From IMG/VR virus record IMGVR_UViG_3300027621_000003, positions 62,001 through 126,000 of that record: DNA of 64,000 nucleotides; one strand, given 5' to 3'. The first letter of the stretch is position 1, and each line of letters starts with the position of its first letter. A program made the position numbers and the translations under genes. Below, piece after piece: positions 8,005 through 59,583 of this stretch. A model generated the notes under the pieces. That model was not told where the DNA came from. It worked only from the letters and a program-made list of their open reading frames with translations, and searched no databases.

Positions 8005-8478
8005 TTAAGTATAAATAGATTTAGATATGTTTATATAGTCAGTACAAATTGCGTATACATTTTTTGTTGTGGTAGATATAAGGTCAGTATCACTTAATAA
8101 CGGAATTATACATTTATCATTTAAGTTAAGTTCTAAATCATGAACCCAAATATGGTTAGTGCTTGTTAACACAAAATTATCTGATGTATGACAAAAAAAC
8201 ATGTATGGTGTTTCATAATTTTTCTGTAATTCACACAATCTTGATGCTGCATTTAAATTTTTACAATGAAACCATATTTTATGTTTTCTTTTTTCTATCC
8301 AAGTTTCCGATATTTCATAATCAGGAGTATCGTGACCTAAAAAAAACTTATTGTTTAAATAGTTAATATCCACCTCAACATCATAACCCGCAGAAATTGC
8401 GGTATCAATATATGATGGTGAATTTTCTCTACTTGGATTAGGGCCAATCATATTACCTCTATGTGAAATTAATTTCAT
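8005..8478 (-). CDS. Glycerophosphodiester phosphodiesterase-like (PLC-like) small protein
   Basis: ISHRGN, GYDVEVD, LGHD, WFHCKN, ICTDY. Confidence 0.65.
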   Translation of the reverse strand: MKLISHRGNMIGPNPSRENSPSYIDTAISAGYDVEVDINYLNNKFFLGHDTPDYEISETWIEKRKHKIWFHCKNLNAASRLCELQKNYETPYMFFCHTSDNFVLTSTNHIWVHDLELNLNDKCIIPLLSDTDLISTTTKNVYAICTDYINISKSIYT

Positions 8479-8783
8479 ATTTCTTCAATTCTAAGTGTTT
8501 TATCATCAATGAATAAATCGTAATAAGGTTTTGTAACATTTAATTCGTGGTGTTTAGCACCCCACTCATTAAGTTGTTTTTTTGTTAAATCATACCAATT
8601 TATTTGTGTACGACTACCACGAGCTGTCCAATATACAATTGTATTCCCATCATCATATAATCTATTAATTTTATCAATATTTTCTTTGATGGGTTTGGCG
8701 TTGTAGTAGTTTCTAGGTTCTGGTGTTTCACAGATTGTTTCATCTATATCAACATAAATGACTCTTGTTTTATTTATTTCCAT
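8475..8783 (-). CDS. Small HAD-superfamily phosphatase (capsule biosynthesis phosphatase-like)
   Basis: VDIDETIC, YWTARG, KPYYDLFIDDK. Confidence 0.75.
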   Translation of the reverse strand: MEINKTRVIYVDIDETICETPEPRNYYNAKPIKENIDKINRLYDDGNTIVYWTARGSRTQINWYDLTKKQLNEWGAKHHELNVTKPYYDLFIDDKTLRIEEI

Positions 8784-9444
8784 TTTGTTTAATAAGGTTT
8801 TGTCTATAAATTTCTTTTTTATCAGTAATTAGGTTATTAACTTCAGTTTCATTCAAAAAATGTGTCTTACCTAAAACGTGACTACCAATAAAAATTTCGG
8901 CAGATTTTTCACAAATATCTGTAGACATTATACATTCTTGAATTGTTTCTCCACAACAAATAATACCATGATTTTGTAGTAATATTAATTTAGGAAAATA
9001 TTTTTCTTCTTTAATAAAAAGATTAATACAATCTTTAATAACATTTGTTAATTCTTCACCAGGTTTAGCATATGGTACAAAACAAGATTTAGTACCATTA
9101 AAAATAACTTGGTCAGGAAATAATCTGTTTTGTGCAAATGTTTTACTTAACTCACTACATAAAATTTTTACAGTATTTGATGGGTGTGTGTGAGAAACAT
9201 AATTAATGTCATCAAAACTTAATAGGTAGGTGTGAAAACTTAATTCCATACTACCTCTTTTTTTAAAATTATTTAATTGATTACCTTTAAAATCAAAAAA
9301 GACTAAATCTTTTTTTGTGAGAGATTCTAATCTTGTCCCACTTGCTTTAATAATTAAGCCATTTTTATACTTAGAGGAAACATTTCCTTCAAAACCGACA
9401 CAATGTTTTGATACAGATTTAGATAGTTCTAATATTTTTTTCAT
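8770..9444 (-). CDS. Class II aldolase/adducin family protein
   Basis: EGNVS, IKASG, SMELSFH, HTHP, LQNHG metal-binding motifs. Confidence 0.85.
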   Translation of the reverse strand: MKKILELSKSVSKHCVGFEGNVSSKYKNGLIIKASGTRLESLTKKDLVFFDFKGNQLNNFKKRGSMELSFHTYLLSFDDINYVSHTHPSNTVKILCSELSKTFAQNRLFPDQVIFNGTKSCFVPYAKPGEELTNVIKDCINLFIKEEKYFPKLILLQNHGIICCGETIQECIMSTDICEKSAEIFIGSHVLGKTHFLNETEVNNLITDKKEIYRQNLIKQNGNK

Positions 9445-9458
9445 TATTATATCTTATT

Positions 9459-10907
9459 TTAACCATTATAGTTAAGATTCAATATAAAATATAATATATA
9501 GTCATAAAAAGTGTAATTCTTATTTATATCAAAAAAGATTAATCTTTTATAATTTAAGAATGTTACCTTGTTAAATCTATTTTCGTCTTGTAAATCAAAT
9601 TCAATTTTATTGTCGGATAATTTTTTTAATATATGTTTAATATTAAATGATTTGTCAATTAATAGTTCTAAACTTAATTTAGGATTAACGTTCAAATTTT
9701 GTAAGTCAATATCATCAATTGTGAAAAATTTTATTATAACATCGGCATTGTCTTTTTGGGGTAATATAAATTGTTCAAAATCAGATTCTCTATTTTTTAT
9801 ATTAGATAAAACTTGGTCAGGAGTATATCCTCTCTCTTTAACATCACGTGATATTTTCCACTTCTTTTTTAATAAATCATCAGTATCCATATAAATTTTT
9901 AAATCATAAAGATTGTTTTCAGATTGATTAAATAAACTATGAAGTCCACAGACAATTAAATTGTTTGATGGTGAAATTGGTTTTTTTTCTGTAAATTTTC
10001 CGGTTGAATGGTCATAATCAACTTGGTAAATTTCATTTCCAACTTTTAAATTGAAAATATCCTCACTCATTTTTGTAATATGATTTGCATTTGGATTTAA
10101 ATGAGTGTAAGTTTTCCAATTGTTATTTGTTCTTTCCCATTTGTGATATCTATCACATTCTAACAAAAAGGAATCCGTAAAAGAAATTTTTAATAAATTA
10201 CTTAATGTGGATTTTCCCGAACCAGAGTCACCACAAATGGCAAAAACATTACATTTTGATAAAATAAAACTATAATCTAAATCAAACAACGTATAGTTAA
10301 TTTTATTTGAATTCAAATATTCATAAAGTAATGTTTCAGGACAAGTACCGTATAAACTAATTAAATTCTGAATGTTGTTATAAATGTTAAAATAATTGTT
10401 CATTATTTTGGAACTTCCAAAAGCAAACGCATCACAAATGTAATTGTCCGTTGGGGTTTCTAACTTTAATTTGTCTATTTTACTATCTTCAGGAATAAAC
10501 AAAGAATCCTTTTCAAAATTAAAAAAATTGGTAGACTTAATTAATAAATCAGGTCTAAGTCGTATTACTAAATCATATTCTTTTCCCGACAAATCCTCAT
10601 TTATTTTTCTTATTTCATTTAACTTATAAAGTTTTGACCAATGATTTATTACATTGTTAATTTTTTTATTCTCATCGTAAAAGATATTATCTTCAACAAG
10701 GGTTGTAATAGGATTTAAAAGATTTTTGATATGATTTAAATCAGATTCACTAATTTGATTAAAATATTTATCCTCTAAATTTTCATTATTAGTTATGTGA
10801 AGATAAACATCAACGTTTACAAAGTTATTAATAATTTCTTCTTTAATAAAATTAATATTTTCTTGGTAATTTCTAAGATAACCTGAAATTAATAACGCAA
10901 CCTTCAT
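9459..10907 (-). CDS. Fusion: N-terminal glycan-locus domain (RxRPD) plus phosphoribulokinase/uridine-kinase-like domain
   Basis: N-terminal KVALLISGYLR..RLRPDL..DAFAFG; C-terminal GDSGSGKST, DRYH, LNPNAN, YDHSTG, GLH, RDVKERG, FILPQK..ADV as in PRK. Confidence 0.75.
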   Translation of the reverse strand: MKVALLISGYLRNYQENINFIKEEIINNFVNVDVYLHITNNENLEDKYFNQISESDLNHIKNLLNPITTLVEDNIFYDENKKINNVINHWSKLYKLNEIRKINEDLSGKEYDLVIRLRPDLLIKSTNFFNFEKDSLFIPEDSKIDKLKLETPTDNYICDAFAFGSSKIMNNYFNIYNNIQNLISLYGTCPETLLYEYLNSNKINYTLFDLDYSFILSKCNVFAICGDSGSGKSTLSNLLKISFTDSFLLECDRYHKWERTNNNWKTYTHLNPNANHITKMSEDIFNLKVGNEIYQVDYDHSTGKFTEKKPISPSNNLIVCGLHSLFNQSENNLYDLKIYMDTDDLLKKKWKISRDVKERGYTPDQVLSNIKNRESDFEQFILPQKDNADVIIKFFTIDDIDLQNLNVNPKLSLELLIDKSFNIKHILKKLSDNKIEFDLQDENRFNKVTFLNYKRLIFFDINKNYTFYDYILYFILNLNYNG

Positions 10908-10917
10908 CGTTTTACTA

Positions 10918-12135
10918 TTAAAAATTAGTTTTAAAACTATCTAAATTTATTTCCCATGGTGAATTTAATCCACCATCTAATTTAATACAATCTTTTGGAT
11001 TAACTTGTTTACTCAAATATTTGGTATCATTATTCCAAGCGGTTAACATAGTATCACTATATGAAATAGTTAGACAATCATTTTCCACTTGGGTTATCTC
11101 CCCGACAATATTATCAACCTTCACTCTCATGTATGTTTTAAACTCACCATTTTCTGTGTGTGATGTGTTATCAAATAAGTTTAAATTAACTTTATTTAAT
11201 GAATATAAAAAACGTTTATTTATATCTAAAAAAAATGGAGATATGATGGCTGTTAAATTACAACTTTTTTTGGAAAATAAAACATTACAAATACCACCAC
11301 CTATTGCACCAACAACTTCTTCAACATTGGCAAATAAAAGTATTTTTTCCGTAGTTGTCATGTTTTCTGTGAATACCTCTGTAAAACCATTTTCAATTAA
11401 AAAATTAACCAAAGAATCTTCGTTGACTAATTTACGTTTAGTTGTGTAGTTTGTACCTATATTACTAAAATCACCATGTAACCAACTTCTTCGTGAAATA
11501 TAAACTTTCTTAGGTAAATTTTCTTGATTAGTATCTTTACTCACTCTCTTAACAATTTTACGATATAAATCATAAATTTCATTTCTTGGGGGTAAATTAG
11601 AATCAAAATCGTGTGTATATGATGTTGATACTAAAATTGATGAGTACTCAGTATTTTCATCTATTATTTTAATATCATTATCTGTAATTCCCAGTATATC
11701 TAAAAACTCAGAAACAAATCTATAATGTTCTTTTTTATTGGGATTTGGATAATTCATTAATAGTTTTAAATTTGGTTTTGTTTTCTTCATTTCCATAAAA
11801 CTTATCAAATATGGTAATGTGTCATAAACAAAATGAAAATAATTATCGGTATTATAAATAAAGTAGAATAAACTTTCTGACTCAAAATTTTTAGTTGTTT
11901 TTTCCTCATCAAATTTAATATCTTTTGAAATTCCTTTCAAAGACATTGTGGTTTCTTGAATAGGATTAACTATTTGATTTGTTTCATTTGAAATAAAAAA
12001 AATGTTTGGATAAAATAAGGATTCTCCAGTTGGGATTACATTTTTTAATTCATAGACATTTATTTCTCGTTGATTTGAGTCAACAGGAAATAAATTAATT
12101 TTATCAATTATTTCTTTATACGATACAAGATTCAT
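10918..12135 (-). CDS. GT61 (DUF563) glycosyltransferase
   Basis: NYFHFVYDTLP, KVYISRR, RKLVNE, VVGAIGGGICNVLF. Confidence 0.75.
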   Translation of the reverse strand: MNLVSYKEIIDKINLFPVDSNQREINVYELKNVIPTGESLFYPNIFFISNETNQIVNPIQETTMSLKGISKDIKFDEEKTTKNFESESLFYFIYNTDNYFHFVYDTLPYLISFMEMKKTKPNLKLLMNYPNPNKKEHYRFVSEFLDILGITDNDIKIIDENTEYSSILVSTSYTHDFDSNLPPRNEIYDLYRKIVKRVSKDTNQENLPKKVYISRRSWLHGDFSNIGTNYTTKRKLVNEDSLVNFLIENGFTEVFTENMTTTEKILLFANVEEVVGAIGGGICNVLFSKKSCNLTAIISPFFLDINKRFLYSLNKVNLNLFDNTSHTENGEFKTYMRVKVDNIVGEITQVENDCLTISYSDTMLTAWNNDTKYLSKQVNPKDCIKLDGGLNSPWEINLDSFKTNF

Positions 12136-13011: not shown

Positions 13012-13735
13012 ATATAAATTCTTTATGTTCGTTGTTTTGTTTAGTTATTTGATTACGTTCGTAATCTAAAAATTCGCCAGAAATTTTATATGGAGAATAC
13101 CCATTCCAATTATAAGTTTGTATATAAAAATTACTATAAGACCCTTGTGTGACATCTGAAAAATCACTTTTTTGTGGTGCTATTGGTAATATTGGACAGT
13201 AACTTTGTTTTTTTGTTGTTATGTTATTATAAATGTACTCATCAATTGCATAATAACCTTGTAAATTATCGGTCACAATTTGTTTAACATCATTAAATAT
13301 TGATTTATGATATACCATCATATTTGTTGCAAATACACCCCTATGTCTTTCTTCTTTAGGTGGAAAATTAGTAATATCAATTAACAATTTATGGTTTTTA
13401 CTAACATCAACAGGTCTATTATGTGTTGGGGATAAATTTAAAATACCAAATTCAGTATTTTCTAACTCAATGTCCAATTTTTCAATAAATGATTTTGCGT
13501 ATGGCATAAATGAACAATCATCTTCTATAACCATAACATATTCATAATCTCTTTCAATTGCAATATCTATGATTGCAATATGAGATAACGTGCATCCTAA
13601 ATGACTACCTGTATCAACAGCTTTGAATAATTCATAATCCCACCCAATGTATGACATTTCTTTTTGGATGTGTTCTAATCTGTCAATACGTTTTTCTAAA
13701 TTTAGAACAAATTTTGGTATTTCATTTAATTTCAT
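13001..13735 (-). CDS. GT25 glycosyltransferase (likely start MKLNEIPK at 13735)
   Basis: VLNLEKRIDR, GCTLSH, VIEDD, AIDEY. Confidence 0.8.
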   Translation of the reverse strand: MKLNEIPKFVLNLEKRIDRLEHIQKEMSYIGWDYELFKAVDTGSHLGCTLSHIAIIDIAIERDYEYVMVIEDDCSFMPYAKSFIEKLDIELENTEFGILNLSPTHNRPVDVSKNHKLLIDITNFPPKEERHRGVFATNMMVYHKSIFNDVKQIVTDNLQGYYAIDEYIYNNITTKKQSYCPILPIAPQKSDFSDVTQGSYSNFYIQTYNWNGYSPYKISGEFLDYERNQITKQNNEHKEFIYEN

Positions 13736-13739
13736 ATCT

Positions 13740-14339: not shown

Positions 14340-14358
14340 TTTTTTATTTTTTTTATGT

Positions 14359-15138: not shown

Positions 15139-15143
15139 TTGTT

Positions 15144-21975: not shown

Positions 21976-22003
21976 CATAAATACTTTTATTGTAGTATTT
22001 ATA
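21976..22003. promoter_or_regulatory. Back-to-back RTATTTAT putative late promoters for divergent genes
   Basis: GTATTTATG on the minus strand (21976-21984) before 21971; GTATTTATA on the plus strand (21995-22003) before 22019. Confidence 0.6.
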
Positions 22004-33698: not shown

Positions 33699-34505
33699 AT
33701 GGAAAAGAAACTTAATTTATCAATAATATTACCTATCAAATCTACATTGGCAAAAGATTTTGATACATACTTTGAAAGTGCCATTAAATCTTTAATAATT
33801 CAAAAAACAACATTTAATGAGTTAATTATTGTTCATACTCAAGAAGAACAATTGGTTACTAAATTAAAAAATTATGATTTTGAAACTTTAAATGTAAAAC
33901 TTGTTGAATATATTGGAGAACCATCATTCCAAAAACAAATTTCATTTGGTGTTGAACACTCTGAAAGTGAATGGGTATCATTCTTTGAGTTTGATGATGA
34001 ATATTCGAATATTTGGTTTGACAATGTTTTAAAATATTCTGAAATATATCCAGATGTGGATGCGTTTTTACCAATAGTTGTTGATGTGGATAATAAAGGT
34101 ACTTTTGCAGGATTTACAAATGAAGCAACATTTGCGGCAAATTTCACACAAGAAATGGGTTATTTAAATAATGAGACATTATTAGATTATCAAAACTTTC
34201 AAACCGCTGGTATGGTAATTAAAAAAGAAAAACTTGTTGATTTTGGTGGATTTAAACCGTCAATTAAATTAACATTTGTTTATGAATTTTTATTAAGAAT
34301 GTCATATAATTCTTTAAGAATTATGACTATACCAAAACTTGGTTACAAACACACAAGTATGAGAGAAGGTTCAATATTTTGGAACTACAAAAATGGTGAC
34401 GATGTGATGACTGAAAATGAAGTAAAGTTTTGGATTTCTACAGCAAAAAAAGAATACTTTTTTAAAGACGACAGAAATATAAAGTATGAAGTTCAAAATG
34501 CTTAA
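33699..34505 (+). CDS. GT2 glycosyltransferase
   Basis: LSIILPI, ELIIV, FFEFDD, YEFLLR. Confidence 0.7.
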   Translation: MEKKLNLSIILPIKSTLAKDFDTYFESAIKSLIIQKTTFNELIIVHTQEEQLVTKLKNYDFETLNVKLVEYIGEPSFQKQISFGVEHSESEWVSFFEFDDEYSNIWFDNVLKYSEIYPDVDAFLPIVVDVDNKGTFAGFTNEATFAANFTQEMGYLNNETLLDYQNFQTAGMVIKKEKLVDFGGFKPSIKLTFVYEFLLRMSYNSLRIMTIPKLGYKHTSMREGSIFWNYKNGDDVMTENEVKFWISTAKKEYFFKDDRNIKYEVQNA

Positions 34506-35242
34506 TGTTATCCGCCGAAACAACCTCAGATTTGGTTAAAAAAAGAGGTAGAAAAGCAACTACTGTAAATTATTTTGATGTTGCCGAAGAAGCGGCGGTA
34601 AGACGATATCTTATTGCGGAAACTTTTGAAGAAAAAAACGCAATTTATAATGAGTTTTTGAGAGGTCCTTTAGATAAGATGATTTCTTCAATCATCCGTA
34701 GATATAAACTATATCGTAAAGATATGAATTTTACCGATATTCATACTGATACACATTCTTTTTTGATGACAAAGGTTGATAAATTTAAACCTTCAAAAGA
34801 AAAGAAAGCGTATTCTTATTTTGGTACTATTTGTAAAAATTATTTGATGGGTCAAATTATTAAAGACCAAAAAGATACAAATAGAAAAATATCATACGAA
34901 GATATATCATCAAGTTTAGAACAAAGACCTGACATGGTTTATTATATGGAACTTGAAAAACTCGAAACAGATGATATAATCCAAGGTTTCTTAAACGAAT
35001 TAAGACATTACATAGAAAATGAACCTTTAACCGAGAATGAAAAAAAGTTAGGTATATCATTATTGGAATTATTTGAAAATTATAAAACCATATTTTTGGG
35101 TACTGATAATAATAAATTTAATAAAAATATTATCTTACTTTCAATTCGTGAAATGACAAATCTTTCAACCAAAGAAATTAGAACAGCAATGAAACGTTTT
35201 AAAAAGTTATATTATGTTGTGTTAAATAAAATAATAGAGTAA
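34505..35242 (+). CDS. Phage sigma-factor-like protein (candidate late sigma)
   Basis: Region-2-like VDKFKPSKEKKAYSYFGTICKNYL and C-terminal HTH-like IREMTNLSTKEIRTAMKR. Confidence 0.55.
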   Translation: MLSAETTSDLVKKRGRKATTVNYFDVAEEAAVRRYLIAETFEEKNAIYNEFLRGPLDKMISSIIRRYKLYRKDMNFTDIHTDTHSFLMTKVDKFKPSKEKKAYSYFGTICKNYLMGQIIKDQKDTNRKISYEDISSSLEQRPDMVYYMELEKLETDDIIQGFLNELRHYIENEPLTENEKKLGISLLELFENYKTIFLGTDNNKFNKNIILLSIREMTNLSTKEIRTAMKRFKKLYYVVLNKIIE

Positions 35243-35271
35243 AAAAAATATTAAAAATAATATTTATCAAT

Positions 35272-37894: not shown

Positions 37895-39398
37895 GTCACA
37901 AAAGAAAATAATATTTCCTGCCGAGGTTGTTAATAATCAAGACCCACAAATGTTGGGTCGTATTAGAGCATATCCGTTAGACCAAAATACAAGAGCCGTA
38001 TTGGAAGGTTATAGTTTTAATCCTGTAACCGATACTTGGGGACCAAAAGACCCCTTTGTACAATTACCATTATTACCAATGTTTTTTAGCCAAGTTCCTG
38101 ACGTTGGGGAAAGAGTTAACATTATTTACCAAAATAGTTTATATCCATTCCAAGACCAATATTATATTCAAGGAGCCTATTCATCACCAATGAGTTTACC
38201 CTTTGAAAATATTTTAGCGGCAAACAAATACACATCATTAGGTGATAGAGTTTTAAGTACATTATCCATTAAAAATAAAGATGGTACATACAAGAATGTA
38301 AAATCTTATGGTGTATTTCCTGAACCTGGTGACAACGCTTTATTGGGTAGAGGTGCGGCCGATGTCATTGTAAGAAGAAATAGTGTTATTTTAAGAGCCG
38401 GAAAAACAAAAAGGTTTGATACAAATAAACTACCTATTGCCAATACAAATAGAGCGTTTGTTCAATTATCAAATTTTGATTCATCAGAAAAAACTAAATA
38501 CACAGACCCAACTTTTATTAAAAAAACACAAACTTTTATTAAACTTGGAACTGCAAATCAACAAATTAAAAAATTAGTTGAGTGGGAAGTTCAAAATTTA
38601 GAAAACCAACAAAATGCCTTCACTGGTTCAATAAGATTATATTCATTAAAACCTGTTAATAAAACATTATCAGACAATATTGATTATGATAGTAATTTAG
38701 AAGATGTTAAATTTTTGGAATACTACCAAAATTTTATTGGTTTTTCATTTGAAAGAACCATTAAATTAATAAATGATTTTATTATTGGTGTTAATAATGG
38801 TCAACTACCAAATGGACCAATTGTTGAAAACCAATTTCCATTTATCTATAGACCAAACATTACCGCCAGAAAAATATTAAGAGACATTTCAACAACCGCA
38901 AATGCCGTTATCTTTACAAATGCATCAAGAATTGCAAATTCAATTACATTAAACCCCGGTTTAGGTACACAAGCCATAAAGTACGCGATTGTACGTTCAA
39001 AAGGTGAAGTAGGAAAACCCATTAAAGTTGATTTAGAAGATGTGGTTTCAAAACAAGTTGTTGCAGATTATGGAACATTTTTAGCCTCAGGTGCAGATAC
39101 AGTTTATCTTTTATCACATAAGTCAAACAAACCTGTTGATTTAGAGGGTACAATATATGGTATTACACAACAAGATATTATAGATAAAGTATTACCTTTT
39201 ACATCATCAATGGTTAGAGGTGAGGAGTTAATTGAATTACTTAATTTAATTGTTAGATTCTTAGTTGCTCACGTTCATCCAGTACCAGGAACCCCACCAG
39301 TTCCCGTTGCAACAGACGGAACACAATCCACACAAATATTGTTTGAATTACAAAATGCAGTAAATAAAATTCTAAATCCAAATATTAGAATTAATTGA
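37887..39398 (+). CDS. Baseplate central spike/hub protein (gp5/gpV-like)
   Basis: N-terminal OB-fold motif VVNNQDPQMLGRIRA..PDVGERVNI; C-terminal VRGEEL..AHVHP (HxH apex motif). Confidence 0.65.
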   Translation: MDKSQKKIIFPAEVVNNQDPQMLGRIRAYPLDQNTRAVLEGYSFNPVTDTWGPKDPFVQLPLLPMFFSQVPDVGERVNIIYQNSLYPFQDQYYIQGAYSSPMSLPFENILAANKYTSLGDRVLSTLSIKNKDGTYKNVKSYGVFPEPGDNALLGRGAADVIVRRNSVILRAGKTKRFDTNKLPIANTNRAFVQLSNFDSSEKTKYTDPTFIKKTQTFIKLGTANQQIKKLVEWEVQNLENQQNAFTGSIRLYSLKPVNKTLSDNIDYDSNLEDVKFLEYYQNFIGFSFERTIKLINDFIIGVNNGQLPNGPIVENQFPFIYRPNITARKILRDISTTANAVIFTNASRIANSITLNPGLGTQAIKYAIVRSKGEVGKPIKVDLEDVVSKQVVADYGTFLASGADTVYLLSHKSNKPVDLEGTIYGITQQDIIDKVLPFTSSMVRGEELIELLNLIVRFLVAHVHPVPGTPPVPVATDGTQSTQILFELQNAVNKILNPNIRIN

Positions 39399-39420
39399 TA
39401 TTTATATAGTAAAATATATA

Positions 39421-41375: not shown

Positions 41376-41399
41376 TTCAAAAAAAAATTATTATCTTTG
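41369..41399 (+). promoter_or_regulatory. Bacteroidota-type housekeeping promoter (TTG-N20-TATCTTTG)
   Basis: TTG 41369-41371, TATCTTTG 41392-41399, ATG at 41413. Confidence 0.6.
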
Positions 41400-42369: not shown

Positions 42370-42418
42370 GTTGTTTTTGTGAAAAAAATTACGATACTTA
42401 ACATAAATATAAAACCAT

Positions 42419-43077: not shown

Positions 43078-43120
43078 AATTTAATTATTTTTTTTATACA
43101 TATAAATACCACGTAAAAAC

Positions 43121-43149
43121 AAAAAAGGGAACCGAAGTTCCCTTTTTTT
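43121..43149 (-). terminator. Intrinsic terminator after the major capsid gene
   Basis: AAAAAAGGGAAC-CGAA-GTTCCCTTTTTTT hairpin (UUCG loop on the minus strand). Confidence 0.85.
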
Positions 43150-43166: not shown

Positions 43167-45023
43167 TTATCTTAATTCTTGTAAGTTGAATGTTCTTACA
43201 CCATCAACTGTTACTCTACCATAGAAACGGTTGTTAACCATTTTCTTAGCGTATCTTGTCATGATACCCTTGATAGGTGTGAAGTTGAATGGGTTATACA
43301 TAGTTGGAGTCAACTGTAAAGGAACATATGGAGCGTAGATGTACCCTGTATCCAACAAGCTAGTACCTTTGTGTCCGATTAACACTTGGTTAGCTGGGAA
43401 GTAAGGGTCACGATACACTTGGTATCTTCCTGACAATGTACCAACTCTTTCAATACCCATGTTGTATTGGTCTTGCTCAGGAGCTGCATTTGATACGTGG
43501 AAGTATTCCAAGTCATCAAAGATAGCAGATACTTCAGAAGATACAACAATCCAGTTAGCACCACCTCTTAAAGTTGATTTGTGAATTTGAGCAGACAATT
43601 GGTTAATTGCTGTAATCAAAGTTTGGTTCCAATCTTTTTGAGTGTAAGGAGTTGTACCAGCAGAAGATAGTCTCTTCCAACCGTTGTAATCCCATCTCAA
43701 GTTCCAAGCTGCACCTTTTCTCAAATCTCTCAAGATTTCTCTATCAATTTCTGCAGCAACTTGCTCAGATAATAATGCTGTTAATTCAGCCTCAGCATCA
43801 ATGTTGTGGAATGCCGCAACGTCTTGAGCTAATTCAGGAGACCATTGTGCTCTCAATTTTCTTTCTGTAACAGAAACAGTTACTGACTCAAGGTCAAAAG
43901 AAACTTCACCGATTTGGTCTTCAAATTCCAACTCTTTATACAATCTGTAAACTGCTAAGAATGCATTATTTGAACTTGTTGTAGATGAGAATGTTGAACC
44001 TGTGTAACCGTCCATAGATGAATCACCACAAGTAATACAAACTGGTACTTGTAAATCAATTTCTAAGAATATGAAACCATTAGCATCACATACGTTGTAG
44101 AAAGAACCACCTGAGTTAGCGTTGTAAGCACCAGGTCCACCAGGGAAATTAACTGTAACATTACTACCATACTGAACAATACCTTTACCATATCTTTGAG
44201 TTACAACTCTGAATAAGTAAGGGTTACTTGTGTTAGCTGAAGTTGTTCCGTTAGTAGAAACACCTAAGATGTTCAAACCTGATATGAATTCTTCAGTATC
44301 CATAGTATTACCATTAGGACCAATCAATTGACCAGCACCAGCGTTAGAGAAACCACTCATAACAATAATTACTTTTCTGTAATTATCTGTACCGTATGCT
44401 GCAGGTAATAAATAACCAGCGTTAGACCAAGCGTAAGTTACAGTTGAAGCAGTTACTGCTGTCCACTGACCTTTTGAATAGTCAAACAAACCAGGAGGAT
44501 TTAATCCAGCTTCGTTACCTTCGTAGAATAAGTCATATAAATCCTTATTGTAAATAGGGTTGAAGTCACCTGTTCCTGAATTGTAACCAGCATCTGGATT
44601 ACCATTATAGTTTCCTGGAGCACCTATAGGAGCGTAGTGTGAACCACTATTTCCAAATAGACCATCTGTTGATGTACCACCAGAATAACCTTGAATTTTA
44701 GGTACGAAGTAGAACAATTTACCGATTGGTAAGTTCATTGCTTGTACAGACACGATGTCGTTAGCTAATAATTTAGAGAATACTCTTCTCACGATTGGGA
44801 AAACAACCGTTTCAAAAGAACCTGAATCAGAAGTTGAAGAAGCTTCGTTAATTAAGTGTGAAGCTTGGTTTTCATACAACTGAGCCACGTTTTCTTTCAT
44901 GTGACCTTTTAGACCTTCTAAAAAGCCAAGTTTATCCCATTTGTTGATTGTGTCTTCTTTGATAACTTTAAGGTGTTTCAAACCAATGTTACCAACAAGA
45001 CCGCTTTCTAATAATGCACCCAT
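43167..45023 (-). CDS. Major capsid protein (T4 gp23-like)
   Basis: PIVRRVF..ANDIVSVQAMNLP, RKLRAQWSPELAQD..H.IDAEAEL..EIDREI, GYIYAPYVPL, FTPIKGIMTRYA. Confidence 0.95.
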   Translation of the reverse strand: MGALLESGLVGNIGLKHLKVIKEDTINKWDKLGFLEGLKGHMKENVAQLYENQASHLINEASSTSDSGSFETVVFPIVRRVFSKLLANDIVSVQAMNLPIGKLFYFVPKIQGYSGGTSTDGLFGNSGSHYAPIGAPGNYNGNPDAGYNSGTGDFNPIYNKDLYDLFYEGNEAGLNPPGLFDYSKGQWTAVTASTVTYAWSNAGYLLPAAYGTDNYRKVIIVMSGFSNAGAGQLIGPNGNTMDTEEFISGLNILGVSTNGTTSANTSNPYLFRVVTQRYGKGIVQYGSNVTVNFPGGPGAYNANSGGSFYNVCDANGFIFLEIDLQVPVCITCGDSSMDGYTGSTFSSTTSSNNAFLAVYRLYKELEFEDQIGEVSFDLESVTVSVTERKLRAQWSPELAQDVAAFHNIDAEAELTALLSEQVAAEIDREILRDLRKGAAWNLRWDYNGWKRLSSAGTTPYTQKDWNQTLITAINQLSAQIHKSTLRGGANWIVVSSEVSAIFDDLEYFHVSNAAPEQDQYNMGIERVGTLSGRYQVYRDPYFPANQVLIGHKGTSLLDTGYIYAPYVPLQLTPTMYNPFNFTPIKGIMTRYAKKMVNNRFYGRVTVDGVRTFNLQELR

Positions 45024-45059
45024 TTTAGTATTTTTTTTGTTTTTAAGTTTTATTTATTT

Positions 45060-46673
45060 TTATTTTTGTATTTTTTGCATAATATCCTTCATTCTTAAGA
45101 ACTGTGGATTTTCATACGTTTTTGACTCAATTAAGTTTTGTGAAGAACCTGATGCTGGAGATTTTCCAATTTTTTCAATAGATTCTGTTACAACACTTTG
45201 AGTACTACTTGTTGTGTTTAATTCTCCTTTAATTGATGAATATAAAGTTTTAGACTCTTTTAATGATTCAACATCATCAAATCTTCTTAAGATATTAATT
45301 TTTTCTTGTTTAGTTGTAGTATGTTCAGTAAACAATCTTGTAGCGTAAGCCAAGTTTGAATTAAATACTGCAACTTCATTTAATTTATCTCTGAAGATAT
45401 TAAGAGCTTTTCTATACTCTTCATTTTTTTCTCTTAATCTTTCAACTTCCTCAGCAAGAGCTTGATTTGGAATTACTTTCATTTTAGGTAAACCTTTTCT
45501 TTCAGCATAATTTCTAGTTCCATTACCTAATGTTCTAGCCGCTTCTTTAGTTTCCTCTTTTTCGTAATCTTTGTAATGACCATCTTTTTCACCAGCTTTC
45601 TTTTCAACACCATCAACATCCTTACGTCTGTATTCGTGTTTTTTAGAACCATACTTATCTTTCATTTCAGCTTCAGTGTATTCAAACTTTTTAGGTTTCA
45701 AATTCATACCAACTCCTTTAGCCATACCTTTTGGTTCAATAGCCGATTCTTTGGTTTCCATTTTTCTACCTTCTTTATATTCAAATTTAGCACTTCCGGT
45801 TTTAACACCTTTACCTACTACAGGTTTACTCATCATTGACCCTTCTTTAGTTTCCATTTTTTTAACTTTGTTAGTTAAAGAGGATTTAGTTAATTTACCC
45901 ATAACTGGTTTAATTGTCATTTTACCTTCAAACATGCTTTCATCACCACTATAATCATTCATGCTTTTATCATCACTATCATCATCCATGTAATCATCCA
46001 TTTCTATTTCATACACTACTTCATCCTCATCAACAACACCATCCTCATTATCATCACCATAATCATTCGGTTGTTCGTAAATGTTCATCTCTTCACCGAA
46101 AATATCAGCCATCATAGAATCTAAATCCTCGTCTGATAATTCTTCTTCTCCATCCATTTCTTGCATAGGTTCGTTTTCCATGTAACTTTCAGTTTGAATA
46201 ATGTATTCAACATCTTCGTCTTCATCACTCAAAGTAATTTGGTCGCCATCTTGTTTAACAATGATACCATCTTCATCACTCATAGATTTAAAAACCTTTA
46301 AGATTTCATCATCAGATGCGTTTGTAAGGTCAATTGGTAGTGTATCATCAGAATCCATATCAAAGTCCATCTCAAGTTCATCTTCCGATTCATCATCGTC
46401 AGAATCCATATCAATGTCCATTTCAACATCATCCATGTTTTCATCATCAGAATCCATATCCATATCCATGTCTAAATCATCTTCCGATTCATCATCCATT
46501 TCAACTCCCATTGATTCATCTTCAGCCTCGTTTTTCAAAGACTCTTTTACTAATTCTGAGATTTCTTCCTTCATTGTAGAAGCAAGTATTCCTTTTGCAT
46601 TTTCGGCAACTACTTGTTCCAAATTTCTCATTTGTAGTAGTGCTTCCTCAACTAACGACTTTTTTTCTGTCAT
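45060..46673 (-). CDS. Prohead scaffold/core protein (gp22-like position)
   Basis: Acidic D/E/M low-complexity region plus coiled coil, many LxE sites, directly upstream of the capsid gene. Confidence 0.7.
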   Translation of the reverse strand: MTEKKSLVEEALLQMRNLEQVVAENAKGILASTMKEEISELVKESLKNEAEDESMGVEMDDESEDDLDMDMDMDSDDENMDDVEMDIDMDSDDDESEDELEMDFDMDSDDTLPIDLTNASDDEILKVFKSMSDEDGIIVKQDGDQITLSDEDEDVEYIIQTESYMENEPMQEMDGEEELSDEDLDSMMADIFGEEMNIYEQPNDYGDDNEDGVVDEDEVVYEIEMDDYMDDDSDDKSMNDYSGDESMFEGKMTIKPVMGKLTKSSLTNKVKKMETKEGSMMSKPVVGKGVKTGSAKFEYKEGRKMETKESAIEPKGMAKGVGMNLKPKKFEYTEAEMKDKYGSKKHEYRRKDVDGVEKKAGEKDGHYKDYEKEETKEAARTLGNGTRNYAERKGLPKMKVIPNQALAEEVERLREKNEEYRKALNIFRDKLNEVAVFNSNLAYATRLFTEHTTTKQEKINILRRFDDVESLKESKTLYSSIKGELNTTSSTQSVVTESIEKIGKSPASGSSQNLIESKTYENPQFLRMKDIMQKIQK

Positions 46674-46755
46674 ATTATTATAGAATAATTTAACATATAA
46701 ATATATCCATATGCCAAAAAATTCTGTTTGGGCTTAGTAAAAACCCTAAATAAAT

Positions 46756-46784
46756 AAAAAACCCCTCGGTTATGAGGGGTTTTT
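46756..46784 (-). terminator. Intrinsic terminator
   Basis: AAAAAACCCCTC-GGTTAT-GAGGGGTTTTT hairpin. Confidence 0.8.
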
Positions 46785-46785
46785 A

Positions 46786-47741: not shown

Positions 47742-47763
47742 ACGTATGTTTTAGTAATAAATA

Positions 47764-48210
47764 CTAGGATGCTTCTTCTTTGCTCTTTTTAGATAGTGTA
47801 AAATCAAAATACTCGTTCTTTTTAAAGTTTTCAATATAAATTTCTTTGGCAATTCTTTTTAATTTATCTTTAAGAATTGTATCTTTAAAATCTATTTCTT
47901 GAGATAAGAATAAAGTAATTTCCAAATTCATAAAACTTTTCTTCCCGTAAACAATCCCGCTAGTTCTTAAATCCAAGTCAATAATATAATTGTCTTTAAA
48001 AAATGTTGGGTCTAGTATTTCAAATATTGTATGTTTTATCTGTCTACTAAAATTTGATACTATTCTTTCCCAATTGTTATAACTTTGTTTTGGTGAAACC
48101 CAACTTTGTAGATTAAGATAAACCGATTTAAAATTTTTGGAATCAACTGTTCCATAACTCACTTTTGAATTGTTGAATCCTACAATTCGTGATGTTTTTC
48201 CTTTTTTCAT
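47764..48210 (-). CDS. Hypothetical protein
   Basis: 148-aa ORF. Confidence 0.6.
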   Translation of the reverse strand: MKKGKTSRIVGFNNSKVSYGTVDSKNFKSVYLNLQSWVSPKQSYNNWERIVSNFSRQIKHTIFEILDPTFFKDNYIIDLDLRTSGIVYGKKSFMNLEITLFLSQEIDFKDTILKDKLKRIAKEIYIENFKKNEYFDFTLSKKSKEEAS

Positions 48211-49198: not shown

Positions 49199-49211
49199 AT
49201 TAATAAATATA

Positions 49212-57949: not shown

Positions 57950-57991
57950 AATTTTACTATATAAATATAGCAATAATGGTAAATTGTTAAA

Positions 57992-58744
57992 TTATTCTAC
58001 GTCAGTATTTTCAATAGATAAATTTTTATCCATTAATTTGTTTTTAAAGTTGAATAATTTGTCAATATATCCGTTTCTACGAAGAAATTTAAAGACCAAA
58101 TTTTCGTATGAAAACTCACCATCTTTTTCCAAACCTGATGACCTATACTTCTTTAATTTTTCTTTAAAACTGTCAATATGTTTTACAGCTTTTTCATAAT
58201 TCTCACTTTTGGAATCCTCAATTGCATTATCAATTTTTGACATCATTGAATTTGCCTTTGATAATAACATTTCTTTATCAATTTTTACACTTTCTTTTTC
58301 AGGTTTGTGAACCCAAGTATCAAACATAACGGAATAGACACCGGTTGAAAAATGTGATTCATCAATATCTTCAGCATATAATTCCACATCAAAACCTTTT
58401 ACGGTAATATTGTGGGTGGTATTAAATAAAGTTTTTTTAAGTTGGAATAATTCTTTGTAAACTTCAACATCTTCAACATCAAATTGTGAGAAGTCAACAT
58501 AAAGGTGTAAATCAATATCTGAAAACTTGGACCAATTATAATTTGCTAGTGAACCAGTAAATCTAACATCATCAACAAATAAATCATCACCCAAGAAATC
58601 CATGAATTCTCCGGCAATCATTAACAATGCTTTTCTAATTTGTGGTTTTAATTTTGGTTCATCGCTTTCAACATCATCCCATATTTGAGGGTTCAATGTT
58701 TCTTGAGTTCCAAAAGAAGATAATATTTCTGAGTATTTATCCAT
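57992..58744 (-). CDS. Pol-beta-superfamily nucleotidyltransferase-like protein
   Basis: TGSLANYNWSKFSDIDLH (GS..DxD) plus VELY third acidic residue. Confidence 0.7.
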   Translation of the reverse strand: MDKYSEILSSFGTQETLNPQIWDDVESDEPKLKPQIRKALLMIAGEFMDFLGDDLFVDDVRFTGSLANYNWSKFSDIDLHLYVDFSQFDVEDVEVYKELFQLKKTLFNTTHNITVKGFDVELYAEDIDESHFSTGVYSVMFDTWVHKPEKESVKIDKEMLLSKANSMMSKIDNAIEDSKSENYEKAVKHIDSFKEKLKKYRSSGLEKDGEFSYENLVFKFLRRNGYIDKLFNFKNKLMDKNLSIENTDVE

Positions 58745-58769
58745 CTTATATAAATACTCAAGATTTTAT

Positions 58770-59015
58770 TTAAGGTAATTTTTTGTATTTGTATACTTTT
58801 GAAATTTTGGAATTGAAATATTTTCCTTGTGATTCTGACAATCTGAATTCTGCATATACATTGTGTGGTACATCTTCATATTCATAACGTGTACCATTTT
58901 TAAATTCTGTAATCATTGTTTTGTCTGCGGTATCATATTCAGTTCTAATAATATTAGATGAATTAATTTCATTAAGAATTTTTGTTCCTTTTATATCTTG
59001 TCTTCCTACTGCCAT
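58770..59015 (-). CDS. KTSC-domain protein
   Basis: SSNI..EYD..EFKNG..YEYEDVP..Y..F..SESQGKYFN..I. Confidence 0.85.
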   Translation of the reverse strand: MAVGRQDIKGTKILNEINSSNIIRTEYDTADKTMITEFKNGTRYEYEDVPHNVYAEFRLSESQGKYFNSKISKVYKYKKLP

Positions 59016-59030
59016 AATAGTATAAATATT

Positions 59031-59063
59031 AAAAGACCCCTGATTTTAGTCAAGGGTCTTTTT
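59031..59063 (-). terminator. Intrinsic terminator after the UVR-repeat gene
   Basis: AAAAGACCCCTGA..TCAAGGGTCTTTT hairpin. Confidence 0.7.
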
Positions 59064-59064
59064 G

Positions 59065-59511
59065 TTAGGGTCTCATTTTTCGTAGTTGGTCTCGGACTTC
59101 AATCGCTCTTTCAAAGTCTTGTCTTTCAATACAATCTTTTAACTCATCCTCAATCTTTTTAATTTCTTCTTGGTCTCTTTCAAAAGTTTTGATTTTATCA
59201 CGAAGATAAATTGCCAATTGGAAATCTTCTTTTTCAACTGCTTTGTCAAGTTGTTGTTTTAATGACTCCAAAGAATTTTTATTCTTTTTTGGTGGAACTG
59301 TTGAACTTGATGTTATGATATAGGTAAATTTTCCATCGGGTGTTGTATAGACTTGTTTTTCCCAATCCATACCATCATCATTTCCTGTTTCTGATTTATG
59401 TTCCATAGAAGAACTTTTAAAGTTAGGGTTGTAATCACCGAACATCTCGTTGAGTTCGTCCATCATTTGTTTTAGTGATTTTCTGCTGTTGTTTCCAAAT
59501 AAGTCAAACAT
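59065..59511 (-). CDS. Protein with two UvrB/UvrC (UVR) motifs; candidate Clp adaptor
   Basis: LDKAVEKEDFQLAIYLRDKI and LKDCIERQDFERAIEVRDQL. Confidence 0.75.
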   Translation of the reverse strand: MFDLFGNNSRKSLKQMMDELNEMFGDYNPNFKSSSMEHKSETGNDDGMDWEKQVYTTPDGKFTYIITSSSTVPPKKNKNSLESLKQQLDKAVEKEDFQLAIYLRDKIKTFERDQEEIKKIEDELKDCIERQDFERAIEVRDQLRKMRP

Positions 59512-59583
59512 ATTTTTTTTATTTTAATTTTTTTATGTATCTTTGTGAAACATAAATACAAAATTATGCCAAATCAACAGTAC

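What the first reader, a model, noticed from the sequence alone, without database searches (positions are those of the whole stretch)
8010..59559. Recurrent sense-strand RTATTTAT motif just upstream of late genes: the reverse complement of the T4 late promoter
Seen about 3-40 nt upstream of starts, in the gene's sense orientation, at 8010-8017(-), 21976-84(-), 21995-22003(+), 35260-68(+), 39398-406(+), 42402-10(-), 43101-09(-), 46696-704(-), 47756-64(-), 49202-10(-), 57960-68(-), 58749-57(-), 59021-29(-) and 59551-59(-). Established: the T4 gp55 late promoter is TATAAATA; TATTTATA is both its reverse complement and a 2-nt variant. Inference: a lineage-specific late promoter read by the sigma-like protein at 34505..35242. 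It would place the mucin/GT operon in the late (morphogenesis) programme.
Basis: partly seen in the sequence, partly recalled or inferred. Interest (0 to 1): 0.62.

Follow-up and report, generated by a model that had tools for sequence, protein, structure and literature searches.

The report
Conserved phage sigma promoter box ATATTTAT
A short AT-rich word (R-TATTTAT-W) that sits just upstream of many genes of this freshwater Bacteroidota-type jumbo phage behaves as a strand-specific, single-box promoter. It is probably read by a phage-encoded sigma factor, and at about half of its sites it lies so close to the start codon that the mRNA would have no leader.

Summary
13 of the 14 listed sites are exact RTATTTAT, and 8011-8017 is CTATTTAT. 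The raw window count is not enriched (21 against 25 expected), but placement is highly non-random. In the window, 12 of 70 genes carry the motif in sense within 45 nt upstream, against 1.3±1.1 in shuffles. In the whole 117.6-kb record, 44 of 149 genes carry TATTTAT against 6.7±2.5. In co-directional spacers the sense:antisense ratio is 23:1.

There is no -35 element. Spacing to the ATG is bimodal: 4-6 nt, or 10 nt and more. Bona fide host-type Bacteroidota -7 boxes (TAHHTTTG) in the same genome peak at 4 nt, which matches the published box-to-start-site distance. This implies leaderless mRNAs.

The box survives in 80 related loci, in the cultured Flavobacterium phage immuto before its structural genes, and in Microcystis phage Mel-JY01. 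Six of seven distant loci keep it just after the sigma gene. In four lake metatranscriptomes, contig depth drops 8- to 40-fold or more at the 46697-46704 site.

ORF 34505-35242 is a sigma-70-family protein, and immuto has only this sigma. Related jumbo genomes also carry a second, canonical sigma. A DnaB/RNR operon in a relative also carries the box, so "late" probably means "non-early". No start site has been mapped at nucleotide resolution.

The parts
21977..21984 (-). GTATTTAT box, 5 nt before the ATG (21971) of the 1314-aa Thr/Pro-rich virion protein. It heads the minus-strand glycosyltransferase operon.
21995..22002 (+). GTATTTAT box, 16 nt before ATG 22019. It heads the plus-strand operon 22019-35242 (glycosyltransferases, PhoH, sigma) and lies back to back with the previous box in a 47-nt divergent spacer.
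35260..35267 (+). ATATTTAT box, 4 nt before ATG 35272 (predicted leaderless), directly after the sigma gene. This site is conserved in 80 related loci and in 6 of 7 distant loci.
39398..39405 (+). ATATTTAT box, 15 nt before ATG 39421. It overlaps the stop codon of the upstream gene.
42403..42410 (-). ATATTTAT box, 33 nt before ATG 42369.
43102..43109 (-). GTATTTAT box, 24 nt before ATG 43077. It lies 10 nt after the strong terminator that ends the MCP gene.
46697..46704 (-). ATATTTAT box, 23 nt before ATG 46673 (537-aa scaffold-like gene, then MCP). The depth step in RNA-library contigs lies here.
47757..47764 (-). GTATTTAT box, 15 nt before ATG 47741 (head maturation protease).
49203..49210 (-). 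ATATTTAT box, 4 nt before ATG 49198 (predicted leaderless). The spacer after the portal gene is only 13 nt.
57961..57968 (-). ATATTTAT box, 11 nt before ATG 57949.
58750..58757 (-). GTATTTAT box, 5 nt before ATG 58744 (predicted leaderless). It is one arm of an inverted repeat whose other arm is at 58733-58740.
59022..59029 (-). ATATTTAT box, 6 nt before ATG 59015. It lies 1 nt after a 12-13-bp terminator stem.
59552..59559 (-). GTATTTAT box, 40 nt before ATG 59511. Its first G is the last base of a TAATTTTG host-type box (59566-59559).
8011..8017 (-). CTATTTAT variant, 10 nt before ATG 8000, inside ORF 8005-8478. This is the weakest of the listed sites.
34505..35242 (+). Sigma-70-family protein (245 aa), the candidate reader of the box.
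43120..43149 (.). Bidirectional intrinsic terminator after the MCP gene.
46756..46785 (.). Bidirectional intrinsic terminator about 50 nt upstream of the 46697-46704 box.
59031..59062 (.). Intrinsic terminator that abuts the 59022-59029 box.
43167..46673 (-). Scaffold-like gene plus MCP gene. This is the unit that is deeply covered in lake metatranscriptome contigs.
59643..59650 (+). Host-type Bacteroidota -7 box (TATATTTG) before the ClpB-like gene 59668-61662. It belongs to the comparison class of promoters.
62599..62606 (-). Host-type -7 box (TATCTTTG), 7 nt before ATG 62591.
41392..41399 (+). Host-type -7 box (TATCTTTG), 13 nt before ATG 41413.

Best explanation
R-A-TATTTAT-W (core TATTTA) is a single-element, -10-type promoter box with no -35 partner. 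Host RNA polymerase reads it on the non-template strand once it carries a phage-encoded sigma factor. The most likely sigma is the divergent sigma-70-family protein at 34505-35242.

The box marks the phage's non-early transcription units. These include the head protease, the scaffold-like + MCP unit, virion proteins, lysis genes, both glycosyltransferase operons and, in relatives, some replication genes. At about half of the sites the box ends 4-6 nt before the ATG, so transcription should begin at or next to the A of the start codon and give leaderless mRNAs. At the other sites a leader of roughly 5-35 nt is made.

What is shown: enrichment, strand bias, spacing, conservation, terminator and operon context, sigma fold, and the RNA depth step.

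What is inferred: the exact start sites, which sigma reads the box, and the timing.

My odds: the box is a promoter element, about 0.8. Given that, this sigma reads it, about 0.6. Many of the mRNAs are leaderless, about 0.6.
For: Enrichment and strand bias.

No -35 element. Only the two positions just upstream are constrained (-1 is A in 74% and T in 4%; -2 is a purine), plus an A/T patch 14-17 nt upstream, across 352 non-redundant sites.

Spacing. In this record the box ends 4 nt (10 sites), 5 nt (9) or 6 nt (3) before the ATG, and otherwise 7-56 nt. The host-type TAHHTTTG boxes in the same record peak at 4 nt (10 of 21) and then mostly jump to 13 nt or more. In Flavobacterium the -7 box spans -12 to -5, with 4-5 nt to the start site (PMC6847099, PMC9723704). 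The base before the ATG is a pyrimidine in 94% of close sites against 47% in the background, which fits the usual pyrimidine(-1)/purine(+1) start preference.

It is not a ribosome-binding site. It is absent inside the long operons and present at their heads. It lies 9 nt before tRNA-Ser(tga), the same distance as host boxes before other tRNAs. In Mel-JY01 it lies 17-37 nt upstream with a GGAG-like sequence in between.

Terminator then box: at 43120-49/43102-09, 59031-62/59022-29 and 46756-85/46697-704.

Conservation. ATATTTAT is the top upstream 8-mer in 80 related loci, 245 against 13.9 expected. Across 68 distinct spacers of 5-52 nt after the sigma gene, only the box (65 of 68, three of them one-base variants) and its 4-6-nt spacing to the ATG are kept. 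In immuto TATTTATA precedes 24 genes against 1.6 expected, including the TerL, portal, sheath, tube, hub, tape-measure and spike genes. Six of seven loci with 31-35% identical sigma homologues (GC 27-51%) have YTATTTA(A/C/T) just after the sigma gene.

RNA. At least 18 lake RNA runs hold the region. In four runs, contig depth is 28-644 in the 46500-46699 bin and 0-16 in the 46700-46899 bin.

Sigma. Profile matches to SigA region 2 (E=2e-3) and to T4 gp55 (E=0.054). phrog_234 (the gp55 family) gives E=3e-5. hhalign against gp55 gives 62% probability and is collinear over 114 columns. The AlphaFold2 model has mean pLDDT 90.9, and all top 50 Foldseek and VIA matches are sigma factors; the sigma-2 domain matches at Z 9.6 with rmsd 2.7 Å.

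immuto (complete genome) has this sigma family (hmmsearch E=7e-36) and no canonical sigma. Its sigma gene ends an operon headed by an early-type box, right before the first TATTTATA gene.

No T7-like RNA polymerase was found in this record or in four relatives.
Against: No start site is mapped at nucleotide resolution. The RNA data are assembled contigs in 200-nt bins, and RNA processing or differential stability would also produce a depth step.

Related jumbo genomes G001-G003 carry a second, canonical sigma (PF04542, 58-64 bits).

In this window the candidate sigma gene sits at the end of an operon whose only visible promoter is the box itself. That would require autoregulation or another trigger.

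The sigma model has a C-terminal sigma-3/sigma-4-like domain, yet no -35 motif is seen.

With a 4-nt spacing, the start would lie 2 nt closer to the box than it does in T4.

LR756508, whose sigma homologue is 24.5% identical, has no TATTTAT near its MCP gene.

The related loci are phylogenetically dependent, so their counts overstate the number of independent events.
Confidence: 0.6

Rival explanations
1. The box is a promoter, but a different factor reads it. Candidates are the second, canonical sigma found in related jumbo genomes, or host sigma-A redirected by a phage protein. In that case the 34505-35242 sigma would read another promoter class that I did not detect.
For: A canonical Sigma70_r2 gene of about 270 aa is present in G001, G002 and G003. 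In G001 it lies in an operon headed by a host-type box, as expected for an early gene that switches on the next class. In the window the divergent sigma sits at the end of a box-headed operon. The box shares T-A at its 5' end and a T-run with the host TAHHTTTG box.
Against: immuto has the box before its structural genes but no canonical sigma, by Pfam scan and by tblastn. The box is kept in phages of Bacteroidota and of a cyanobacterium, whose primary sigmas read different promoters, and these phages share the divergent sigma. The box sits immediately downstream of the divergent sigma gene even at 31-35% identity. It lacks the near-invariant T-7 and G-5 of the host box under the register that aligns its leading TA with the host box.
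Confidence: 0.2
2. The word acts at the RNA level. It would be either a translation-initiation enhancer placed a fixed distance before the AUG in a host that does not use Shine-Dalgarno pairing, or a cleavage site for a host or phage endoribonuclease that creates stable 5' ends.
For: 22 of 47 sites in this record sit 4-6 nt before the ATG, which resembles the spacing of a ribosome-binding site. A depth step in RNA contigs cannot tell initiation from processing. PMC2988020 makes the same caution for T4.
Against: The box is missing from most genes inside the operons. Spacing is bimodal and reaches 40 nt, and 11-31 nt in immuto. In Mel-JY01 a GGAG-like sequence lies between the box and the ATG. 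The box also precedes a tRNA gene. It follows strong terminators, so an upstream transcript to be cleaved is unlikely. Confirmed promoter-type boxes (TAHHTTTG) show the same 4-nt mode. The A/T patch and the constraint on the flanking positions lie upstream of any transcript that starts after the box.
Confidence: 0.07
3. The pattern is a by-product of AT-rich intergenic DNA and has no function.
For: The genome is about 30% GC, and the raw count of RTATTTAT equals the shuffle expectation.
Against: Local dinucleotide shuffles of the upstream regions give 6.7±2.5 against 44 observed. The strand ratio is 23:1. Among all A/T-only 7-mers it ranks first. It is conserved in spacers that are otherwise unalignable, including in a locus with 51% GC.
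Confidence: 0.01

Closest known systems
Bacteriophage T4 late promoters (TATAAATA, read by gp55 with gp33 and the gp45 clamp)
   Same: A single 8-bp AT-rich box at the -10 position with no -35 element, found on either strand of the genome, dozens of copies per genome, in front of head, tail and lysis genes. It is read by a small, divergent phage sigma of the sigma-70 family. The phage has T4-type MCP, portal and prohead protease genes.
   Different: The sense-strand word is TATTTAT(A/T), so T4 positions -10 and -9 are T instead of A, and -9 is one of the bases that gp55 flips into a pocket. The sigma is 245 aa with an extra C-terminal sigma-3/4-like domain, against 185 aa for gp55. No gp45-type clamp was found in this record or in relatives up to 88% complete. 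The cultured relative replicates with a family-A polymerase. The box lies 4-6 nt from the ATG at about half of the sites. In a relative it also heads a DnaB/RNR operon.
Bacteroidota primary-sigma promoters (-7 box TAHHTTTG, -33 TTTG)
   Same: The same genome uses these boxes before small ORFs, the ClpB-like gene and tRNAs. Both box types show the same 4-nt mode of distance to the ATG, the same gap in the distribution, and A/T patches upstream instead of a clear -33/-35 element.
   Different: TATTTAT lacks the TTTG half, which is nearly invariant in host promoters. It is conserved in a cyanophage and tracks a phage sigma family.
Leaderless-mRNA promoters of Actinobacteria, Deinococcus and archaea
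   Same: A -10-type box at a fixed short distance from the start codon, no ribosome-binding sequence, and a pyrimidine before the initiating A.
   Different: Here this occurs in a phage of a phylum where only about 5.5% of host mRNAs are leaderless and 87% have leaders longer than 10 nt. Two promoter classes share the arrangement. No start site has been mapped.
Variant late-promoter consensus sequences of T4-related phages (Aeh1, cyanophage S-PM2)
   Same: Lineage-specific variation of the late box that accompanies divergent gp55 homologues.
   Different: The known variants change positions -13/-12 and keep the AAATA half. This one changes the centre of the box.

Membership tests
T4-type late transcription system (gp55 / TATAAATA) | A single AT-rich -10-like box with no conserved -35 element | tested here: met
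   Position frequency matrices of 47 sites in this record and 352 non-redundant sites show only the two flanking positions upstream, the eighth position W, and a weak A/T patch.
T4-type late transcription system (gp55 / TATAAATA) | Non-template-strand consensus TATAAATA | tested here: not met
   The sense-strand word is TATTTAT(A/T). In co-directional spacers TATTTATA is 18 sense to 1 antisense, and the antisense orientation corresponds to TATAAATA in sense. T4 numbering is from PMC2988020 and PMC7892883.
T4-type late transcription system (gp55 / TATAAATA) | The sigma is a gp55 orthologue: a sigma-R2-only protein of about 185 aa with a C-terminal clamp-binding motif | tested here: inconclusive
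   phrog_234 gives E=3e-5 at 20 bits. The profile against gp55 (7d7c_F) gives E=0.054, but against SigA it gives 0.002. hhalign gives 62% probability. The protein is 245 aa with an extra C-terminal helical domain that aligns to sigma-3/4.
T4-type late transcription system (gp55 / TATAAATA) | A gp45 sliding clamp is encoded and acts as the activator | tested here: not met
   phrog_223 gives no match in this record or in four relatives of 160-270 kb, the best of them 88% complete. Caveats: the genomes are incomplete, and the control search also matched nothing anywhere.
T4-type late transcription system (gp55 / TATAAATA) | The box lies at -13 to -6 relative to mapped start sites, and transcripts appear late and depend on replication | not testable with these tools
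   Only assembled contigs from RNA runs were available. There is no time course.
Sigma-70 family | Sigma-2 domain (regions 1.2-2.4) by sequence and by fold | tested here: met
   Profile matches to SigA and ECF region 2. PF04542 gives a weak hit, E=0.004. In the model, residues 22-123 match RpoS region 2 at Z 9.6, rmsd 2.7 Å, with 93 of 94 residues aligned. All top 50 matches are sigma factors.
Sigma-70 family | Binds RNA polymerase core and directs initiation | not testable with these tools
   This needs biochemistry.
Bacteroidota sigma-A promoter (-7 box) | T-12 A-11 H H T-8 T-7 T-6 G-5 | tested here: not met
   TATTTAT(A/T) lacks T-7 and G-5 under the register that aligns its leading TA with the host box. 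True TAHHTTTG boxes form a separate set of genes in the same record.
Leaderless mRNA genes | Promoter box at a fixed 4-7 nt from the start codon, with a pyrimidine at -1 and a purine at +1 | tested here: met
   22 of 47 sites lie at 4-6 nt. A pyrimidine precedes the ATG in 94% of close sites against 47% in the background. Host boxes peak at 4 nt, which equals the published box-to-start-site distance.
Leaderless mRNA genes | The primary 5' end coincides with the A of the AUG | not testable with these tools
   No raw reads were available for this phage.
Ribosome-binding / translation-initiation element | Present before most genes at one fixed distance, and only before protein-coding genes | tested here: not met
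   The box is absent inside the operons, its spacing is bimodal from 4 to 40 nt, and it occurs before tRNA-Ser.

The most novel reading that the evidence does not exclude
The box and ORF 34505-35242 would be the type example of a large, undescribed family of phage sigma factors: at least 1,086 clusters at 50% identity, with thousands of metagenomic members. In this reading the family reads a TATTTA-type single-box promoter in T4-superfamily-like phages of Bacteroidota and Cyanobacteria, without a T4-type clamp. In the Bacteroidota phages the early (host-type) and sigma-dependent promoters would both be set 4-6 nt from the ATG. A large share of phage mRNAs would then be leaderless, in a phylum where host mRNAs rarely are.
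Probability: 0.4. Interest if true: 0.7.

Novelty: new variant of a known kind. Interest (0 to 1): 0.58.

Why it matters
The finding gives a concrete promoter rule for an abundant group of freshwater jumbo phages that is poorly annotated and actively transcribed. With that rule, transcription units can be read from sequence alone.

It pairs the promoter with a candidate sigma from a very large family that has no annotation. The pairing can be tested directly in a cultured system, Flavobacterium phage immuto on Flavobacterium sp. LMO8.

It suggests that T4-style late control by a single-box promoter and a small sigma exists without the sliding-clamp coupling that defines it in T4.

It predicts unusually heavy use of leaderless mRNAs by phages of Bacteroidota, a phylum with atypical rules for both transcription and translation start signals. 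That would be useful for building expression tools for flavobacteria and for interpreting viral metatranscriptomes.

Tried and rejected
A plain motif count in the window shows no enrichment. That test is the wrong one, because coding-strand copies dilute the signal.

PHROG and Pfam scans of the sigma ORF and of most box-driven genes gave nothing or only families of unknown function, so a functional late-versus-early split within the window is thin.

A single-sequence search of the PDB gave only noise.

An E. coli-type sigma-70 promoter scan was below the shuffle expectation, 72 against 83.

I looked for a -35 partner and found none.

TAHHTTTG inside coding regions is too frequent to locate an internal promoter for the sigma gene.

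The family searches for a T4 clamp and for a T7-like RNA polymerase found nothing, and their controls also matched nothing, so absence is weakly supported. DNA polymerase A was not found in G001.

Read laying returned contigs only and reported no recurrent molecule ends (table 6). Contig ends at 46589 and 46626 reflect strain divergence, not transcript ends.

LR756508 lacks the box near its MCP gene and instead shows AACTTAA, 6 sense to 0 antisense. I did not pursue this.

In Mel-JY01 the box after the sigma gene overlaps the annotated ATG, so that site is uninformative.

Literature searches for TATTTATA or ATATTTAT as a phage promoter, and for Mel-JY01, found nothing.

Full report
Context. 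The window is the reverse strand of bases 47636-111635 of a 117,610-bp IMG/VR viral record, which CheckV estimates to be 39% complete. GC content is about 30%. The record encodes a T4-type major capsid protein, portal and large terminase, a head maturation protease and a virion structural protein, a PhoH-like protein and a ClpB-like ATPase, and many glycosyltransferases. The nearest named relatives by MCP are Flavobacterium phage vB_FspM_immuto, Microcystis phage Mel-JY01, an uncultured 484-kb phage (LR756508) and Rhodothermus phage RM378. A second upstream word, TATCTTTG, is the Bacteroidota primary-sigma -7 box, so the host is very probably a member of the Bacteroidota. The region is held by at least 18 freshwater and lake RNA runs from many studies.

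Observation. Thirteen of the fourteen listed sites are exact RTATTTAT. The site at 8011-8017 is CTATTTAT and lies inside an ORF. The naive count in the window is not enriched: 21 against 25.0±4.4. The placement is.
- TATTTAT is the top-ranked upstream 7-mer.
- It lies in sense within 60 nt of 44 of 149 starts, against 6.7±2.5 in local dinucleotide shuffles (maximum 16 of 1000).
- Within the window, RTATTTAT precedes 12 of 70 genes, against 1.34±1.14 (maximum 6 of 2000).
- In spacers between co-directional genes it is 23 sense to 1 antisense.
- Its intergenic density is about 13 times its coding density.
- Upstream copies are preceded by A, G or C, whereas other copies are mostly preceded by T.
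- Across 352 non-redundant sites from this record, immuto and the relatives, the consensus is R-A-TATTTAT-W, with an A/T patch 14-17 nt upstream and nothing resembling a -35 element.

Spacing. In this record the box ends 4 nt (10 sites), 5 nt (9 sites) or 6 nt (3 sites) before the ATG, and otherwise 7-56 nt. The genome supplies its own control. TAHHTTTG boxes end exactly 4 nt before the ATG at 10 of 21 sites, with only three sites between 4 and 13 nt. In Flavobacterium johnsoniae the -7 box occupies -12 to -5 and lies 4-5 nt from the start site, and 87% of host transcripts have leaders longer than 10 nt (PMC6847099). In F. psychrophilum 5.5% of mRNAs are leaderless (PMC9723704). The host-type boxes here are therefore set to start transcription on the A of the ATG, and the TATTTAT boxes follow the same two-mode rule. 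At the close sites the base before the ATG is a pyrimidine in 94% of cases, against 47% for genes with neither box. That is the usual pyrimidine(-1)/purine(+1) start preference.

Promoter rather than translation signal. The two long divergent operons (21971 down to 1 on the minus strand, and 22019 to 35242 on the plus strand) carry the box only in their shared 47-nt spacer, apart from the weak copies at 8011 and 16711. No strong terminators lie inside them. Three of the strongest terminators in the 41-60-kb stretch are followed by the box within 1-50 nt. Outside the window the record holds 28 tRNA genes. Host boxes sit 9-11 nt before tRNA-Leu, tRNA-Phe and tRNA-Met, and TATTTAT sits 9 nt before tRNA-Ser(tga).

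RNA. Contigs from four independent lake metatranscriptomes were laid on 43300-49290. They give depths of 30-2000 over most of the MCP and scaffold-like genes. In the 46500-46699 bin the depths are 147, 28, 134 and 644. In the next bin, 46700-46899, they are 3.4, 0, 4.6 and 15.6, and they stay low up to 49290. The step therefore lies within one 200-nt bin of the box at 46697-46704. These are contigs, not reads, so they show neither an exact 5' end nor the strand. The uneven depth does argue that the signal is RNA rather than contaminating DNA.

Conservation.
- In 80 related viral contigs (sigma 57-93% identical), ATATTTAT is the top upstream 8-mer, 245 against 13.9 expected. Its spacing is again bimodal, with 100 sites at 4-6 nt and 119 at 12-16 nt.
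- The spacer between the sigma gene and the next gene exists in 68 distinct versions of 5-52 nt. Only the box (65 of the 68, three of them one-base variants) and its 4-6-nt spacing to the ATG are kept, down to minimal spacers such as TAA-TATTTAT-AGTT-ATG.
- In the complete genome of immuto, TATTTATA precedes 24 genes against 1.6 expected. These include the TerL, portal, sheath, tube, hub, tape-measure, spike and fibre genes, at 11-31 nt, plus five sites at 2-5 nt. The small ORFs at 60-76 kb carry a different repeated box, TATATTTAGGTAT.
- In the structural region of Mel-JY01, ATATTTAT precedes 8 of 31 genes against 0.4 expected, at 17-37 nt, with GGAG-like sequences in between.
- In seven loci that encode 31-35% identical sigma homologues (GC 27-51%), six have YTATTTA(A/C/T) in the spacer after the sigma gene, two of them behind a terminator.
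- A 270-kb relative (G001, 88% complete) has the box before 78 of 297 genes, and host boxes before 23.

The sigma. ORF 34505-35242 has no Pfam or PHROG hit at library-wide thresholds. Its family is nevertheless very large: at least 7,970 word-search hits, 1,086 clusters at 50% identity, and the identical protein on a 295,908-bp contig. A 55-sequence profile matches SigA region 2 (E=0.002), an ECF sigma (E=0.034) and T4 gp55 (7d7c_F, E=0.054). The gp55 PHROG matches at E=3e-5 in a single-genome search. hhalign against gp55 gives 62% probability over 114 collinear columns. In that alignment gp55 pocket residues F86 and Y97 are conserved, while H95 and T99 are replaced. The pocket residues are those listed in PMC7892883. 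The AlphaFold2 model is confident (pLDDT 90.9), and all top 50 Foldseek and VIA matches are sigma factors, with the sigma-2 domain at Z 9.6 and rmsd 2.7 Å. The protein is thus a sigma-70-family member. Orthology with gp55 is possible but not established. It is longer than gp55 and has a C-terminal domain that aligns with sigma-3/4.

Which sigma reads the box? The evidence for the window's sigma is phyletic.
- immuto, a complete genome, has a clear family member, KNV73_gp118 (hmmsearch E=7e-36), and no canonical sigma.
- That gene ends an operon headed by the early-type box, and the first TATTTATA gene follows it directly.
- Mel-JY01 also has a homologue.

Against it:
- Relatives G001-G003 encode an additional canonical sigma (PF04542, 58-64 bits). 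In G001 it lies in an operon headed by a host-type box.
- In this window the divergent sigma is the last gene of an operon whose only visible promoter is the box itself.

No gp45-type clamp and no T7-like RNA polymerase were detected in this record or in four relatives, and immuto uses a family-A DNA polymerase. The T4 coupling of late transcription to the clamp probably does not apply.

Timing. The box precedes the head protease, the scaffold-like + MCP unit, the Thr/Pro-rich virion protein and an endolysin homologue. In immuto it precedes nearly all the structural operons. In G001 it also heads the DnaB-RNR operon. I therefore read it as the phage-sigma-dependent, non-early class rather than a strictly morphogenetic one. 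Placing the glycosyltransferase operons in that class is reasonable but untested.

Comparison with T4. The T4 late box is T-13 A-12 T-11 A-10 A-9 A-8 T-7 A-6, has no -35 element, and gp55 flips the bases at -12, -9 and -8. TATTTATA differs at -10 and -9. Its being the reverse complement of the T4 box is a coincidence of two near-palindromic AT words, because the strong strand bias shows that only one strand is read. No paper in the library describes this box.

Verdict. This is a real, conserved, strand-specific promoter-type element. It is a new variant of the T4 kind of late promoter, tied by co-occurrence to a large uncharacterised family of phage sigmas, and it adds a testable prediction of widespread leaderless mRNAs. 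The open points are the nucleotide-level start sites, which sigma reads the box, and the timing.

Noticed in passing
window 41392-41399(+), 59643-59650(+), 62599-62606(-); record G000 2.8-47 kb: Host-type Bacteroidota -7 boxes (TAHHTTTG) precede small ORFs, the ClpB-like gene and others. At 10 genes of the record the box ends exactly 4 nt before the ATG, which predicts leaderless early mRNAs, far more often than reported for flavobacterial hosts.
   Followed up: partly
G000:C1 17.6-43 kb (loci L096-L098), outside the window: There are 28 tRNA genes in several arrays. Host-type boxes sit 9-11 nt before tRNA-Leu, tRNA-Phe and tRNA-Met, and TATTTAT sits 9 nt before tRNA-Ser(tga).
   Followed up: partly
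G001:C1:246459-247274(-) (L095); also G002 and G003: Related jumbo genomes encode a second, canonical sigma-70-family gene of about 270 aa (Sigma70_r2, 58-64 bits). It lies in an operon headed by a host-type box. It is absent from the 117-kb record and from phage immuto.
   Followed up: partly
window 58731-58759: An inverted repeat, GAGTATTTAT ... ATAAATACTC, has 10-nt arms that bracket the ATG of gene 57992-58744. The promoter box is one arm. It could be a regulatory hairpin or operator.
   Followed up: no
window 18027-21971(-), with 1-17969(-) and 22019-34505(+): A 1314-aa protein with a Thr/Pro-rich tract (Ser+Thr 39-49% in residues 700-1100) and a virion-structural C-terminus is flanked by about 35 kb of glycosyltransferase-rich operons. 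This suggests a heavily glycosylated virion protein.
   Followed up: partly
window 43887-44176 (inside the MCP gene): Contigs from three RNA runs skip 247-277 nt here (flagged 'between: not known'). The MCP is about 100 aa longer than typical gp23-like proteins, and tblastn matches it in two pieces. A strain-variable insertion domain is likely, but splicing is not excluded.
   Followed up: no
immuto NC_055915, 60-76 kb (L012): A repeated early cassette, TTCGTATATTTAGGTATCAATAATTAAAAC, lies about 27 nt before at least 15 small ORFs. It is a near-consensus host -7 box followed by a constant leader.
   Followed up: no
L100 (LR756508, 151982-193520): This 484-kb phage has a 24.5% identical sigma homologue but no TATTTAT near its MCP gene. 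AACTTAA occurs upstream of 6 of 54 genes in sense and 0 in antisense, which may reflect a diverged specificity.
   Followed up: partly
window 59668-61662(+): A phage-encoded ClpB/Hsp104-type double-AAA+ ATPase (AAA_2, AAA_lid_9, ClpB_D2-small) sits behind a host-type promoter box.
   Followed up: no
window 43120-43149, 46756-46785, 59031-59062, 61689-61713: Perfect GC-cored hairpins are flanked by A-runs on one side and T-runs on the other, so they would work as bidirectional terminators at the borders of transcription units.
   Followed up: partly
L110 (Mel-JY01, 159532-159545): After the sigma homologue's stop codon the sequence reads TGA-TATTT-ATG, so the box overlaps the annotated start of the next gene. 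Either that start is mis-called or the geometry differs in the cyanophage.
   Followed up: no
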